Below are positions 4,044 to 38,761 of a DNA stretch of 64,000 nucleotides, piece by piece. Below the pieces are notes generated by a model. That model saw nothing but the letters and a program-made list of their open reading frames with translations. It was not told the origin of the DNA and did no database searches. Position 1 is the stretch's first letter, and each line of letters opens with the position of its first letter. The stretch spans positions 62,001 to 126,000 of IMG/VR virus record IMGVR_UViG_3300043446_004613; one strand, written 5' to 3'. A program made the position numbers and the translations under genes.

Positions 4044-4443
4044 CAGCAGCTTTTAACAAAGTTTCGTCAGGGCAGAGCATAACGGCGGCCTGTTGGTAAA
4101 TCTGACCTTCCAGTTCGTTACCGTCGGCAAAAAATTTACCGGCCATCTCCGAGGCTTTGATCCAAGCGTCTTTTCCGTGTTGAATTTCCAGCTGGCGACA
4201 GACCAGTGATGGTCGCCACAAGCGCTCTACCGGGCGTACGCTGCCGCAGTCGAGGAATACCTGAATACCGGTCAGGATAAACAGCGCACTGTTGGCTGCC
4301 TCTGCCGGATCAGCACCTTCACTAGCCATCAACAAGGCCAGCATGTTGGCTAATTTCTCGTTCTCGCCGCCTTCCTTTAGCGGCAGCAACTGAATCGGTT
4401 CAGGTTTTGCTTCGGGCGATGGTGTTGGTTGTGGAGTATCCAT
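4027..4443 (-). CDS. hypothetical protein (138 aa)
   Basis: ORF in operon run. Confidence 0.6.
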   Translation of the reverse strand: MDTPQPTPSPEAKPEPIQLLPLKEGGENEKLANMLALLMASEGADPAEAANSALFILTGIQVFLDCGSVRPVERLWRPSLVCRQLEIQHGKDAWIKASEMAGKFFADGNELEGQIYQQAAVMLCPDETLLKAAVDDKQ

Positions 4444-35380: not shown

Positions 35381-35410
35381 CGAATCAAAAGAACGGTGTT
35401 CTTAAAAAAT

Positions 35411-36481
35411 ATGGAACGTGAATCACAAAGTATACCGCTACCATGCTTCGGCATGGAGCATAATAGCAGCGATCCGCAGTGTTTAAGCTGTAAGCATGAA
35501 GCCGATTGCCGCATATTCATGGGTGCTCGCGCAGATAAAGTGACGCTGGATCAGGTAAAGTTCGACTTGATCTCAGACAAGTACCCAAAAGAAATATTTA
35601 ATGTTGACGACCCTGACAAGGTGCGACTGCAAACACTATACTGTAATTGTTACGCTACGGTATTTGACGGAGTAGTCCCCGATAAAAACGACAATGCTGA
35701 GCGCTTTAGTGCAAAGATATTAGCCAACGCCAACGCTGCTGATTGTTCACTTCGCATGTTCATGCTGTCAAACATGATAGCTCACGAGACACACGAAAAA
35801 CAGGTTATCAAGCATACGGAGAAACTGCGAGCGTCACGCTTTACGGCACGTTCGCTCACAAGCGCGTACGCCATAAAACGGGCGCAGATGTATCAACAGA
35901 TGTGCCGTGACCGCTTTGGCGTATTCAGTGTTAAAAGCTTGGCGGCATTGTCGGATGATAAGGAAACCATGACCGACACTGAACAGCTGATGCTGCAAAA
36001 TGAAGTCATGGCCGGTACGTGGATGGTGCGCCACAAGATATTTAACAGCGGCCCGAGCGAAAGACTGATGTTTGACACCCTTGAATTCCAACTGAGCCAT
36101 GAATGGTTGGCACTGGAATCATCTTACACGCGCTACGTGCTCACGCCGATGCGCCTCGGCGAGCTTAAAAGCACCAAGGTACAGGAGTATCGGCGCAAAG
36201 AAGTACTCGACCTTATCGGTTTTTTGAAGCGTAACCCGAGCAAAGGCCGCTGGTATTGGACGACGCGTCAGGCTATCATGGCAAAAGCTGTGACGCAGGT
36301 GCTCGCAAAATTTAATCTGCAACCGTGCGATTTCATGTATAGTCGCGAACCTGTCACAGACGTGATGAGTTTTTGGCGCACGCTGGGCCTGACAGTCCGG
36401 CACTACCACTGCCTGTTGTACCTGAACGGCGAAAACAATTTATTTACGCCGCGTCACCTTCGCTGGGAACACCGTTCTTAA
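35411..36481 (+). CDS. hypothetical protein with N-terminal Cys cluster, replication-associated
   Basis: PCFG...DPQCLSCKHEADC; directly upstream of helicase. Confidence 0.7.
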   Translation: MERESQSIPLPCFGMEHNSSDPQCLSCKHEADCRIFMGARADKVTLDQVKFDLISDKYPKEIFNVDDPDKVRLQTLYCNCYATVFDGVVPDKNDNAERFSAKILANANAADCSLRMFMLSNMIAHETHEKQVIKHTEKLRASRFTARSLTSAYAIKRAQMYQQMCRDRFGVFSVKSLAALSDDKETMTDTEQLMLQNEVMAGTWMVRHKIFNSGPSERLMFDTLEFQLSHEWLALESSYTRYVLTPMRLGELKSTKVQEYRRKEVLDLIGFLKRNPSKGRWYWTTRQAIMAKAVTQVLAKFNLQPCDFMYSREPVTDVMSFWRTLGLTVRHYHCLLYLNGENNLFTPRHLRWEHRS

Positions 36482-36488
36482 CACCGCT

Positions 36489-37928
36489 ATGTCACGCTGG
36501 GAAACCTACAACTTCACGAACGACTTTCAGGACATGATCCTCGCGTGCCTTATCCGGCACCCGGAAGAATTTTATGCGTTCGGCGAAATCATCAAACCGG
36601 AATTCTTCACCGGATCAATAGCCACCGAAGCGGTATTCAATCTGATGCAGTATCGGACTGAGTACGGCAAGGTGCCTAACTTTACGGTACTGGCCAACTA
36701 CGCCTTTCACCGCTCGGCCACCGTTAACATCGATCACGCCAAGGAACTTTTCGACTACATCGAGAAACTGGCCAGCATTGAAACATCGGAGCGCAAGTAC
36801 ATCGTCAACTCGACGGTAAAATTTGCGAAGGAGCGGGCTATCTATGACGCGATCCGCAAGATTCACGCAGCCCAGACAGAAGGTAAACCGTTGGATGTCG
36901 TCAAAGTCATGTCCGATGCGCAGGCCGTCGGCGAGAACATGAACGATTACGGCCTGTCGCTGGCCCACGACACCGACAAGATCATCGATACGGTCACCCA
37001 GAAGAGCTACGGCGTCATGACGGGCTACGCGGAATTCGACAAGCTCTGGAAAACCGGCTGGGCACCCGGCTGGCTGATCGTACCGCTGGCTCCGCCTAAG
37101 CGCTACAAGACCACGTTTTCGATCAATCTGGCGCTTAATATCGTCACCAATCAGGACGCGGATGTGCTGTATTACGCCTGCGAAATCTCGCAGGAACTGG
37201 CAGGCATGCGTGCGCTTTGTAATGTCACGGGATGGAGTACCGATGCTTTCTACGAAAGCCCGGAAAAGGGCAAGCTTACGGCCAAGAAAGCTGTTGATGG
37301 AAAACTCTGGGGTAACATCGTCTTCAAAAGCTATCCGTCCAAAAGTGCATCGATCAGTCAGATCAAAGCCCATGCCAAGCACCTGATTGAAACACACTCG
37401 TTGAACGTCAGAGCGATCATCATCGACTACGCAGAAACGGTTAAGGCAGACAAGGTCGATAAAGACATGCCTGACTGGCGTCAGCAAGCTGACATCTACA
37501 CGCAGGCGCGTGCGATGGGGTCTGAACTTGGATGCTGCGTCATCATGCCGGATCGCTGCAATAAAGACACGGTGGGCCGTGATGTGCCGAGCATGAAGTC
37601 GTTCCAAGGTGCGTTTGAGAAAGCCGGTATTGTCGACATCGCTATCGGTCTGTGCGCCAGCGACAGCGAACTGAAGCAAAACCGGATGCGCTATTTTGTG
37701 TTCCTCAACCGTCACGGAGAAGCCTTGAAGCACTACGAGGGCAGCATCGATCCTGAACGTATGCAGATGTCCGTCGGGAGCGAGATCGAGTACAATCCAG
37801 ACGAAGAAGAAAACCAAAGCCGTGGCGGTGGTAGCGGCCATTCCCGCAGCGGTTTACCTAAAAAGCGCACAAGCGCAGCGTCTCGGCAAGCGGCACACGA
37901 AGCGGCGATGACTCAAGCAGACGGATAA
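36489..37928 (+). CDS. DnaB/gp41-like replicative helicase
   Basis: RecA-like SF4 layout: APPKRYKT (variant Walker A), YYACE, IIIDY Walker B, VFLNRHG. Confidence 0.85.
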   Translation: MSRWETYNFTNDFQDMILACLIRHPEEFYAFGEIIKPEFFTGSIATEAVFNLMQYRTEYGKVPNFTVLANYAFHRSATVNIDHAKELFDYIEKLASIETSERKYIVNSTVKFAKERAIYDAIRKIHAAQTEGKPLDVVKVMSDAQAVGENMNDYGLSLAHDTDKIIDTVTQKSYGVMTGYAEFDKLWKTGWAPGWLIVPLAPPKRYKTTFSINLALNIVTNQDADVLYYACEISQELAGMRALCNVTGWSTDAFYESPEKGKLTAKKAVDGKLWGNIVFKSYPSKSASISQIKAHAKHLIETHSLNVRAIIIDYAETVKADKVDKDMPDWRQQADIYTQARAMGSELGCCVIMPDRCNKDTVGRDVPSMKSFQGAFEKAGIVDIAIGLCASDSELKQNRMRYFVFLNRHGEALKHYEGSIDPERMQMSVGSEIEYNPDEEENQSRGGGSGHSRSGLPKKRTSAASRQAAHEAAMTQADG

Positions 37929-37934
37929 TTTTAA

Positions 37935-37963
37935 TTGACTGTATACATTTGTGTGCGTACAGT
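37935..37963 (+). promoter_or_regulatory. sigma70-type promoter for the tRNA/ncRNA/tmRNA cluster
   Basis: TTGACT-17 nt-TACAGT ending 5 nt before the tRNA. Confidence 0.8.
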
Positions 37964-37968
37964 CTGTT

Positions 37969-38045
37969 CGCGGGGTGGAGCAGCCCGGTAGCTCGTCTGG
38001 CTCATAACCAGAAGGTCGTTGGTTCAAATCCAACCTCCGCAACCA
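37969..38045 (+). tRNA. tRNA-fMet (CAT), initiator type
   Basis: Full cloverleaf, C1:A72 mismatch, anticodon loop CTCATAA, encoded CCA. Confidence 0.95.
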
Positions 38046-38054
38046 ATTTCGGTA

Positions 38055-38216
38055 GCTTGCCGTGAGCAAGTGAATGTCGCAGCACGAGCGGCTAGGTACA
38101 GTGCGGGTTGAGAGATTCCCGGCGTCGTGCAGTGTCTCTCTGGTGGAGGGCCAGTGATGGCCCCCGGCGAGCAGCCTAGCGTGACTGCCGCAGTCTTTAC
38201 CGGCTGCAACTGCTCG
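38055..38216 (+). ncRNA. candidate structured ncRNA of unknown class
   Basis: Nested helices, GNRA hairpin and a 6-bp loop-loop pseudoknot; followed by a U-rich tract. Confidence 0.6.
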
Positions 38217-38234
38217 CTTTTTGATTTTTGATTT

Positions 38235-38652
38235 GGGCGCGTACTGGTTTCGACTTTGATCGTAGCGGTGACGCCGACATGCCGAGGATGATGGTTGGCC
38301 TCGTAAAACAAACCGTCAAAAGTTAAATGCTGAAGAAGCTGAACTGAACAGCCTCCTCGCGGAAGCCGAAAGCATTTTCAACAATGCTGACGAAGTTCTC
38401 GCGAACGCTGAAGCTGTGGCGGCCTAACGGCCACCACCCGTTTACCGATCGATGCCTGCTGAATCGAGTAAACGCCATTAGCAGGACAGTGTGGATGCCG
38501 AGCAACGTCGGCGTTGGCCCGTGCCAGCCTATGGCGCAACCGGCAGGGTTTTCAGTTGTCGCTCTGATCCTGCCGCACAAAAGCGAAGAAGCATGTGAAT
38601 GGTGCAGTGTTACGGACATAGGACAGGGGTTCAACTCCCCTCGCGTCCACCA
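38235..38652 (+). ncRNA. ssrA: transfer-messenger RNA (tmRNA)
   Basis: 5' GGGCGCGTACTGGTTTCGAC; 3' GGGGTTCAACTCCCCTCGCGTCCACCA; G3-U wobble; pk1 CGAGG/CCTCGTAAA; tag ORF 38329-38427 ending AVAA*. Confidence 0.95.
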
Positions 38653-38656
38653 CTTT

Positions 38657-38761
38657 ATGAAAGAATTCTTGATCATGTTCGGTGTTGGCTTTGGTGTAGT
38701 CTTGCTTGGGTTTTTGATTGGAAGGCTCTTGGCTAACGTCCTTTTCCCAGAGTCAGACTAA
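38657..38761 (+). CDS. small membrane peptide (34 aa)
   Basis: MKEFLIMFGVGFGVVLLGFLIGRLLANVLFPESD. Confidence 0.55.
   Translation: MKEFLIMFGVGFGVVLLGFLIGRLLANVLFPESD

What the first reader, a model, noticed from the sequence alone, without database searches (positions are those of the whole stretch)
38055..38234. Unrecognised pseudoknotted RNA between tRNA-fMet and tmRNA
Seen in a 189-nt gap with no convincing ORF: hairpin CTTGC/GCAAG (38056-70); P1 CGAGCG/TGCTCG (38085-90/38211-16); P2 GCTAGGT/GCCTAGC (38091-97/38174-80); stem CGGG/CCCG (38104-07/38118-21) whose loop GAGAGA (38110-15) perfectly complements TCTCTC (38135-40); GGGCCA-GTGA-TGGCCC GNRA hairpin (38148-63); GCAGTC/GGCTGC (38190-207); then a U-rich tract. 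I could not match it to SRP, RNase P, 6S or common riboswitch signatures. Inference: a novel translation-related phage ncRNA or ribozyme that is co-transcribed and processed with the tRNA and tmRNA.
Basis: partly seen in the sequence, partly recalled or inferred. Interest (0 to 1): 0.75.

Follow-up and report, generated by a model that had tools for sequence, protein, structure and literature searches.

The report
Spacer between phage tRNA and tmRNA
The 189-base gap between a phage's initiator tRNA gene and its tmRNA gene is most likely a transcribed spacer, not a new pseudoknotted ribozyme, but its last 80 bases form a two-hairpin element that recurs in one related phage.

Summary
The gap (38046-38234) is real. 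It lies between an initiator-type tRNA-Met (37969-38045) and a full tmRNA (38235-38652) in a 211-kb uncultured freshwater jumbo phage. The overall fold is no more stable than shuffled sequence (z about -0.5 to -0.7).

In the relative with the same layout (tRNA 79% and tmRNA 73% identical) the spacer core cannot be aligned. The 5' half, which holds the 5' strands of P1 and P2, stem P3 and the GAGAGA loop, has no homologue anywhere.

The two ends belong to the neighbouring genes. One is an AUUU trailer after CCA. The other is a 12-nt leader motif found in front of many phage tmRNAs.

The 3' 80 nt (about 38140-38217) do have one significant homologue, in the tRNA/tmRNA cluster of a related phage (G004).

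Verdict: a composite transcribed spacer containing one small conserved structured module of unknown role. No evidence supports a pseudoknot or a ribozyme. Expression could not be tested.

The parts
37935..37963 (+). Sigma-70-like promoter candidate (TTGACT, 17 nt, TACAGT). It ends 6 nt before the tRNA, so it would start transcription at about the tRNA's first base.
   Evidence: Consensus scan only: 1 site found against 1.5 expected in shuffles, so this is weak evidence.
37969..38045 (+). Initiator-type tRNA-Met (CAT) with encoded CCA and a C1/A72 mismatch.
   Evidence: ARAGORN; Rfam RF00005 at 61.4 bits.
38046..38049 (+). AUUU trailer directly after CCA. It recurs after tRNA 3' ends in related phages and is probably a 3'-processing site (inferred).
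   Evidence: CCA followed by ATTT appears in the window, L167, L172 and L170, and twice in L169.
38046..38138 (+). Non-conserved 5' half of the spacer.
Evidence: No similarity to G004 (z -0.66), and no similarity of the spacer core (38054-38215) to the spacers of L167, L172 or L171.
38140..38217 (+). Conserved two-hairpin module: a single-stranded CUGGUGGA, hairpin B, CCG, then hairpin C.
   Evidence: Homologue at G004:59265-59343. Model R2 scores 20.8 bits, E 9e-4 per genome. Local alignment z 7.9, with 0 of 500 shuffles as good. Identity is 65% overall and 73% in the core, against 66% for the two tmRNAs. Both copies give the same MFE architecture, with z -2.4 and -4.9.
38148..38163 (+). It can be extended by 38144-46 pairing with 38164-66.
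   Evidence: Two of its 6 pairs changed on both sides in G004 and stayed paired.
38167..38217 (+). Hairpin C: outer stem 38167-74 with 38210-17, conserved core 38169-74 with 38210-15.
   Evidence: One compensatory pair (A-U to U-A) and five invariant pairs. It is part of the MFE of the module and of the spacer's last 80 nt, 38155-38234.
38218..38234 (+). U-rich pre-tmRNA leader: TTTTTGA twice, then TTT. Bases 38223-38234 match the conserved motif G(A/T)TCTTTGA plus 2-4 nt that abuts the tmRNA's first G.
   Evidence: The motif precedes the tmRNA in L167, L172, L169, L166 and L170, which were found without using the motif, and in L184, L186-L188, L190, L191 and L195. In this genome it occurs only at the tmRNA.
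38235..38652 (+). tmRNA with G3-U in the acceptor stem and a 32-aa tag (coding part 38329-38427).
   Evidence: RF00023 at 127.5 bits; ARAGORN; translation.

Best explanation
The finding is the internal transcribed spacer of a phage tRNA-fMet/tmRNA unit. It is a composite, not one folded RNA.

(1) The first bases (AUUU after CCA) are the tRNA's 3' trailer.
(2) About 90 nt of lineage-specific sequence follow, under no detectable constraint.
(3) About 80 nt (38140-38217) fold into two hairpins that are kept in at least one related phage. In this window the second hairpin is a GC-rich 8-bp stem running straight into a U tract. This most likely acts as a structural insulator, or as a leaky terminator or 3'-end stabiliser, between the tRNA and the tmRNA.
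(4) The last 12-17 nt are the conserved leader motif that sets or accompanies the tmRNA's mature 5' end.

Shown: the anatomy, the lack of conservation of the 5' half, the homology and shared fold of the module, and the conservation of both ends.
Inferred: transcription through the spacer, processing at both ends, and the insulator or terminator role.
For: - Flanking genes and strand.
- Promoter-like site just 5' of the tRNA, and no terminator called by the scan between the genes.
- Whole-gap fold no better than shuffles.
- No Rfam match.
- Relatives G013/G002 have tRNA-Met, a 183-nt spacer and a tmRNA with a homologous long tag. The tRNA is 79% identical (z 21) and the tmRNA 73% (z 31), but the spacer core scores z -0.08.
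- One phage (L187) has the tmRNA about 21 nt after a tRNA, so a long spacer is not required.
- Module homology and shared fold.
- A stable hairpin within 0-25 nt of the leader motif in all five relatives examined, with unrelated sequences.
- A 3.7-kb contig from the source sample is 97% identical over 37800-38046 and then diverges right after the tRNA's CCA, which suggests the spacer varies even between strains.
Against: - The module is as conserved as the tmRNA itself (65-73% against 66%) while the surrounding spacer cannot be aligned. That fits a specific function better than a generic insulator.
- In G004 hairpin C is not followed by a U tract, so a terminator role is not conserved.
- Hairpin C has a 35-nt branched interior, outside the usual terminator form, and the scan did not call it.
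- Transcription and processing are untested.
- Only two members are known, so the covariation rests on three pairs in an alignment fitted to the structure.
Confidence: 0.55

Rival explanations
1. The 3' 80-nt module, alone or with the whole spacer, is a functional small RNA released when the tRNA 3' end and tmRNA 5' end are processed. Precedents are spacer-derived regulators of E. coli tRNA operons and the two stable RNAs of the T4 tRNA cluster. Its conserved single-stranded UGGUGGA(G) could pair with the UCCACCA 3' end of the tmRNA or of tRNA-Ala-type acceptor ends.
For: The module is conserved at tmRNA-like identity inside otherwise unalignable spacers. It has three compensatory pairs, and both copies have a well-defined MFE at 26-40% of the ensemble. 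The conserved linker is complementary to 7 of the last 8 nt of the window's tmRNA and to 8 of 8 in G004. After RNase P cleavage the product would end in a hairpin plus U tail, as many bacterial small RNAs do (established knowledge).
Against: Only two members were found in 25 related or tmRNA-bearing phage records. None were found in IMG/VR by pattern or in cultured phages. It is absent from G013/G002, the relatives with the most similar tmRNA examined. There are no expression data. A 7-8 nt complementarity to a universal CCA end could be a relic of an inverted tRNA end.
Confidence: 0.25
2. The spacer is decayed sequence with no function of its own: remnants of lost tRNA or tmRNA-like genes, or of an inverted tRNA 3' end. 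The G004 similarity would reflect common descent or a transfer, not selection.
For: Related clusters contain degenerate tRNA-like pieces: sub-threshold tRNA hits in L167, a partial tmRNA-like hit at L169 1220-1269, and a tRNA missed by ARAGORN in L170. TGGTGGAG is the reverse complement of the CTCCACCA ends of tRNAs and tmRNAs throughout these loci. Spacer cores differ completely between relatives.
Against: No tRNA or tmRNA model matches the gap even at E<=10. Neutral sequence in these phages appears saturated, yet the module keeps 65-73% identity and its substitutions in stems are compensatory.
Confidence: 0.12
3. One reading: one pseudoknotted RNA of about 180 nt (P1-P5 plus a loop-to-strand pseudoknot) that acts as a ribozyme or translation-related ncRNA.
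For: All the helices exist. The pseudoknot looks sterically feasible judging by its loop lengths (my own reading of the sequence). No known family explains the gap.
Against: The fold is not above chance, and the model is about 10 kcal/mol above the MFE. The 5' strands of P1, P2, P3 and the pseudoknot lie in the non-conserved half. P1's 3' strand is used by the conserved hairpin C. A covariance model of this structure finds nothing in relatives. No ribozyme family matches.
Confidence: 0.03
4. The gap encodes a 24-aa peptide (ATG 38157 to TGA 38231) preceded by GGAGG (38145-49) at 7-nt spacing.
For: The sequence shows GGAGG, 7 nt, ATG and an open frame of 24 codons.
Against: Genes of this phage show no Shine-Dalgarno signal. 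They carry GTTCTT 6-9 nt before the start instead. The start codon is buried in hairpin B. In G004 the ATG is absent, and the differences fall mainly on first and second codon positions (read). The stop codon lies inside the conserved tmRNA leader motif.
Confidence: 0.03

Closest known systems
Transcribed spacers of bacterial tRNA operons that act as RNAs after processing (E. coli 3'ETS of leuZ and the metZ-metW spacer; from my own knowledge, not checked in a paper here)
   Same: A non-coding stretch between or after tRNA-type genes on one strand. It would be released by the processing of its neighbours and would end in a hairpin plus U-rich tail.
   Different: Here the downstream gene is a tmRNA in a phage. 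No target, no Hfq link and no expression data exist. Only the 3' 80 nt are conserved, and in only one other genome.
Stable RNAs 'species 1' and 'species 2' (rnaC, rnaD) of the phage T4 tRNA cluster (from my own knowledge)
   Same: Phage-encoded, inside a tRNA gene cluster, co-transcribed and processed with the tRNAs, and of unknown function.
   Different: No sequence or model comparison was possible, since these RNAs were not among the Rfam hits. T4 and this phage are unrelated, and the closest cultured-phage helicase is under 27% identical.
Intrinsic (Rho-independent) terminator
   Same: A GC-rich 8-9 bp stem (38167-74 with 38210-17) followed at once by five U and more U-rich sequence.
   Different: The stem encloses 35 nt with its own inner hairpin instead of a 3-8 nt loop. 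The homologous hairpin in G004 has no U tract. The U tract here doubles as the conserved tmRNA leader.
T-box leader, acceptor-end recognition
   Same: A single-stranded UGG-containing stretch complementary to a tRNA-type NCCA 3' end, next to a hairpin.
   Different: There is no Rfam T-box match, no specifier loop, no downstream regulated ORF and no antiterminator/terminator pair. This is a resemblance only.
Bacterial Y RNA-like YrlA (RF02553)
   Same: Related phages carry sub-threshold YrlA-like hits in the same RNA clusters.
   Different: There is no YrlA hit in the window at E<=5. The hits in relatives lie downstream of the tmRNA, not in the spacer.

Membership tests
Any Rfam 15 family (including SRP, RNase P, 6S, tRNA, tmRNA, YrlA, T-box, riboswitches and the small self-cleaving ribozymes) | Covariance-model score at or above the family's gathering score | tested here: not met
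   No hit inside 38046-38234 at gathering score, or at E<=10 on a 401-nt search that uses the laxest filters.
Intrinsic terminator | GC-rich stem of at least 5 bp | tested here: met
   38167-74 pairs with 38210-17: 8 Watson-Crick pairs, 6 of them G-C.
Intrinsic terminator | Short loop (about 3-8 nt) | tested here: not met
   35 nt lie between the strands, with an inner hairpin. The scan did not call it.
Intrinsic terminator | U tract directly 3' of the stem | tested here: met
   38218-22 is TTTTT, followed by GATTTTTGATTT. The G004 homologue lacks it.
Intrinsic terminator | Transcripts end there | not testable with these tools
   No RNA run was listed.
Spacer-derived small RNA of a tRNA operon | Lies between co-transcribed tRNA-type genes | tested here: inconclusive
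   The genes share a strand, a promoter-like site precedes the tRNA, and the scan called no terminator. However, a conserved motif abuts the tmRNA 5' end and might be its own start signal.
Spacer-derived small RNA of a tRNA operon | Accumulates as a discrete stable RNA and has a target | not testable with these tools
   No transcriptome data were available, and the host is unknown.
Conserved structured RNA (general criterion) | Homologues with compensatory base changes | tested here: inconclusive
For 38140-38217 there are two members, 3 of 14-15 pairs changed on both sides, 93% of cells paired, and no covariation when partners are slid. Two sequences are too few.
Self-cleaving ribozyme | Match to a known ribozyme fold, or demonstrated cleavage | tested here: not met
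   No ribozyme family matches in the gap. Cleavage itself cannot be tested here.

The most novel reading that the evidence does not exclude
The 80-nt two-hairpin module (38140-38217) may be a new tmRNA-associated RNA element. Its invariant single-stranded UGGUGGA(G) would pair with the UCCACCA 3' end of the tmRNA, or of host tRNA-Ala-type acceptor ends. It could act in cis within the precursor or in trans after release, masking or sensing the acceptor end in a T-box-like manner. A mirror reading: on the minus strand the same bases form an 8-bp helix with a G-U at the 3:70 position, A73 and CCA, which is an alanine-minihelix look-alike.
Probability: 0.08. Interest if true: 0.75.

Novelty: new member of a known kind. 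Interest (0 to 1): 0.35.

Why it matters
If the main reading holds, this is an ordinary transcribed spacer and the 'novel ribozyme' claim can be dropped. That is useful for curating phage RNA clusters.

The small conserved module is worth a note. It is one of very few non-tRNA, non-tmRNA elements seen to persist in the RNA clusters of an uncultured jumbo-phage family. Its conserved linker is complementary to the tmRNA's CCA end.

Two by-products may matter more for annotating these phages. One is a leader motif that abuts the 5' end of many phage tmRNAs. The other is a GTTCTT motif 6-9 nt upstream of gene starts that takes the place of a Shine-Dalgarno signal. The second affects gene calling and hints at leaderless transcripts or a processing signal.

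Tried and rejected
- **Rfam.** Searched at gathering and permissive thresholds on the gap, on 5 kb around it and on six related loci. Nothing falls in the gap.
- **Repeats in the own genome.** The gap is unique. Short co-linear matches at window 4203-4392 lie inside a minus-strand ORF. After allowing for about 80 short hits they are within chance (my own rough estimate is 15%), and there is no protein similarity.
- **Anchored pattern scans** (tRNA T-arm, gap, tmRNA 5' end) in viral, metagenome and species-genome collections. These found only analogous layouts with unrelated spacers: L009/L020/L024, L028 and L057. L008 holds a 64-codon ORF.
- **Neighbouring proteins.** Relatives of the helicase and DNA polymerase are syntenic up to the helicase and then differ. 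Relatives of the downstream DUF3405 protein are only 45% identical and sit in other contexts.
The tmRNA tag was too short to use as a protein query.
- **Covariance models.** The two-sequence model of the module found no third member.
- **Cultured phages.** No DNA match to the module. The helicase is under 27% identical to any cultured phage.
- **Expression.** Only the source sample holds the sequence, and no RNA run was listed. Read laying showed only contigs, and the window's own contig was filtered out.
- **Intergenic GC content.** A crude gene map made this test uninformative.
- **Pseudo-tmRNA next to the G004 module.** This rests on a 16-bit Infernal hit, and a global alignment did not bear it out.
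- **Chi-like reading of CTGGTGG.** Considered from memory and not pursued.

Full report
**Setting.** The window is bases 62001-126000 of a 211-kb IMG/VR virus record estimated 93% complete. Only its source sample, a freshwater metagenome, holds the sequence. No cultured phage is close: the DnaB-type helicase next to the finding is under 27% identical to any cultured-phage protein. The whole genome has just two RNA genes detectable by ARAGORN, a tRNA-Met(CAT) and a tmRNA.

**The observation.**
- ARAGORN and Rfam place the tRNA at 37969-38045 and a full-length tmRNA at 38235-38652 (127.5 bits). Its tag is unusually long at 32 aa.
- The tRNA closely resembles bacterial initiator tRNA as I recall it (not tested) and has the C1/A72 mismatch.
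- The 189-nt gap has no Rfam hit at gathering score. A 401-nt search at E<=10 also finds none.
- The + strand MFE (-71.4 kcal/mol) is no better than dinucleotide shuffles (z -0.71; z about -0.5).
The best fold that keeps them scores -61.8.
- The tRNA itself scores only z -1.06, so thermodynamics cannot decide. Comparative data are needed.

**Finding relatives.**
- Single-protein searches found one IMG/VR relative without the RNA genes.
- The large protein collection holds many helicase relatives at 60-68% identity on contigs of 220-250 kb. Synteny holds up to the helicase stop (37928) and then breaks, and none has the tRNA/tmRNA there.
- Anchored DNA patterns in the three collections gave only analogous layouts with unrelated spacers.
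- An alignment of 29 helicases (A2) found 15 IMG/VR relatives, seven of which carry a tmRNA.
- G013 and G002 have tRNA-Met, a 183-nt spacer and a tmRNA whose 33-aa tag is clearly homologous to the window's. G014, G015, G008 and G004 have other tRNAs or longer spacers upstream.

**Is the spacer conserved?** Between the window and G013 the tRNA is 79% identical (z 21) and the tmRNA 73% (z 31). The spacer core scores z -0.08. One phage (L187) has the tmRNA about 21 nt after a tRNA. The spacer as a whole is therefore neither conserved nor required.

**The two ends.**
- CCA is followed by AUUU in the window and after several tRNA-type ends in relatives.
- The last 12 nt (38223-38234) match a motif, G(A/T)TCTTTGA plus 2-4 nt, that abuts the first G of the tmRNA in the family's tmRNAs. 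These were found without using the motif.
- The same motif appears in unrelated AT-rich phage contigs. There only TTTGA was imposed by my search pattern.
- In the window its TTTTTGA part is present twice in tandem. In this genome the motif occurs only at the tmRNA.

**A conserved module.**
- The R1 search gave a weak partial hit in G004. On inspection it shares CUGGUGGAGGGC, a hairpin and GCCCCCG with the window.
- A model of 38135-38222 (R2) then matched G004:59265-59343 full-length at 20.8 bits, E 9e-4 per genome. This site is about 300 nt upstream of G004's tmRNA on the same strand.
- A plain local alignment gives z 7.9, with 0 of 500 shuffles as good. The 5' half of the gap gives z -0.66.
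- Identity is 65% overall and 73% in the core, compared with 66% for the two tmRNAs.
- Both copies fold, as the MFE with 26-40% of the ensemble, into the same two hairpins (z -2.4 and -4.9).
- RNAalifold predicts the same structure. Sliding the partners removes all covariation.
P2 would have to form a pseudoknot with it.
- A two-sequence model (R3) found no third member in 25 phage records. An IMG/VR pattern scan found only chance hits, and cultured phages gave nothing.

**Which strand?** Neither strand is clearly favoured in the window (-39.5 against -38.7 kcal/mol). G004's long hairpin C uses three wobble pairs that exist only on the + strand (-40.1 against -36.1), and all neighbouring RNA genes are on the + strand. 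On the minus strand, hairpin B extends to 8 bp with a G-U and is followed by ACCA, an alanine-acceptor look-alike. On the + strand the invariant UGGUGGA(G) is complementary to the UCCACCA end of the tmRNA. Either could be a relic of an inverted tRNA end, because TGGTGGAG is the reverse complement of many tRNA and tmRNA ends in these loci.

**Interpretation.** I read the gap as a composite transcribed spacer:
- a tRNA trailer;
- about 90 nt of unconstrained sequence;
- an 80-nt two-hairpin module whose second stem runs into a U tract;
- the tmRNA leader motif.

All five relatives examined have some stable hairpin within 0-25 nt of the leader motif, with unrelated sequences. This fits an insulating, 3'-stabilising or leaky terminator role. 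The module's tmRNA-like level of conservation keeps a specific RNA function open as the main rival. A pseudoknotted ribozyme is not supported. A 24-aa ORF with GGAGG is unlikely: this phage's genes do not use Shine-Dalgarno signals, and the ORF is not kept in G004.

**Limits.**
- No RNA run holds the sequence, so transcription, processing and stability are inferred.
- Read laying showed only contigs, and the window's own contig was filtered out. One 3.7-kb contig is 97% identical over 37800-38046 and diverges right after the CCA, which hints at strain-level variation of the spacer.
- The covariation rests on two sequences in an alignment fitted to the model.

Noticed in passing
window 38223-38234; L167 about 1489-1500; L172, L169, L166 and L170 just 5' of their tmRNAs; L184, L186, L187, L188, L190, L191, L195: A conserved motif, G(A/T)TCTTTGA plus 2-4 nt, abuts the mature 5' G of phage tmRNAs in very different phages (GC 29-58%). 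In AT-rich phages a sigma-70-like promoter sits about 20 nt upstream, so there the motif lies in the RNA leader. Its role is unknown; it could be an RNase P or E determinant, or a start signal.
   Followed up: partly
whole genome G000; for example window 36474-36479 (before the helicase ATG at 36489) and the divergent pair at window about 35385-35403: GTTCTT lies 6-9 nt upstream of the start codon of at least 27 ORFs, often preceded by an A-rich stretch and CY. GGAGG and AGGAG show no such positional peak. Helicase relatives show the same motif, but the AT-rich phages that share the tmRNA leader motif do not. The spacing to ATG equals the spacing from the motif to tmRNA +1. This may be a promoter for leaderless mRNAs or a cleavage signal, and it matters for gene calling.
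   Followed up: partly
window 38329-38427; L167 tmRNA 1501-1926: The tmRNA tag is 32 aa (33 aa in G013/G002) and is recognisably conserved between them. This is much longer than the roughly 10-aa bacterial tags I recall. Other phage tmRNAs found here also have tags of 24-29 aa.
   Followed up: no
window 37928 onward, compared with L084, L087, L088 and L002: Synteny with relatives ends at the helicase stop codon. The tRNA, spacer, tmRNA and the following + strand genes (a 34-aa membrane-like ORF at 38657-38761, a 92-aa ORF and a DUF3405 protein) replace a minus-strand peptidase-like gene and a methyltransferase cluster. In G013 and G002 the tmRNA cluster lies about 30 kb from the helicase.
   Followed up: partly
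L167 2767-2880; L172 2878-2942; L169 2324-2391, 2605-2661, 2669-2730: Sub-threshold matches to the Y RNA-like family YrlA (up to 39.9 bits, E 8e-6, gathering score 69) lie downstream of the tmRNA in three related phages. None occurs in the window.
   Followed up: no
L169 about 924-1012 and 1220-1269; L170 1358-1428: G004 has an element of about 88 nt with a GGGCGG...CCGUCC acceptor-like stem (G-U third pair) ending in ACCA, which ARAGORN does not call. It also has a 50-nt partial tmRNA-like hit just after the conserved module. G008 has a tRNA (40 bits) that ARAGORN missed.
   Followed up: no
L009 6357-6983; L020; L024: Human-gut phage contigs show the same layout: tRNA-Met, a 194-198 nt AT-rich spacer, then a tmRNA with tag ANKYAEKVAA. 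There is no sequence similarity to the window's spacer. Their spacer folds with z -2.2.
   Followed up: partly
window 37800-38046 (run X2, record 9): A 3660-nt contig from the source sample is 97% identical up to the tRNA's CCA and then continues with different bases. A close strain therefore seems to carry something else in place of the spacer. Only about 15 nt beyond the CCA are known.
   Followed up: no
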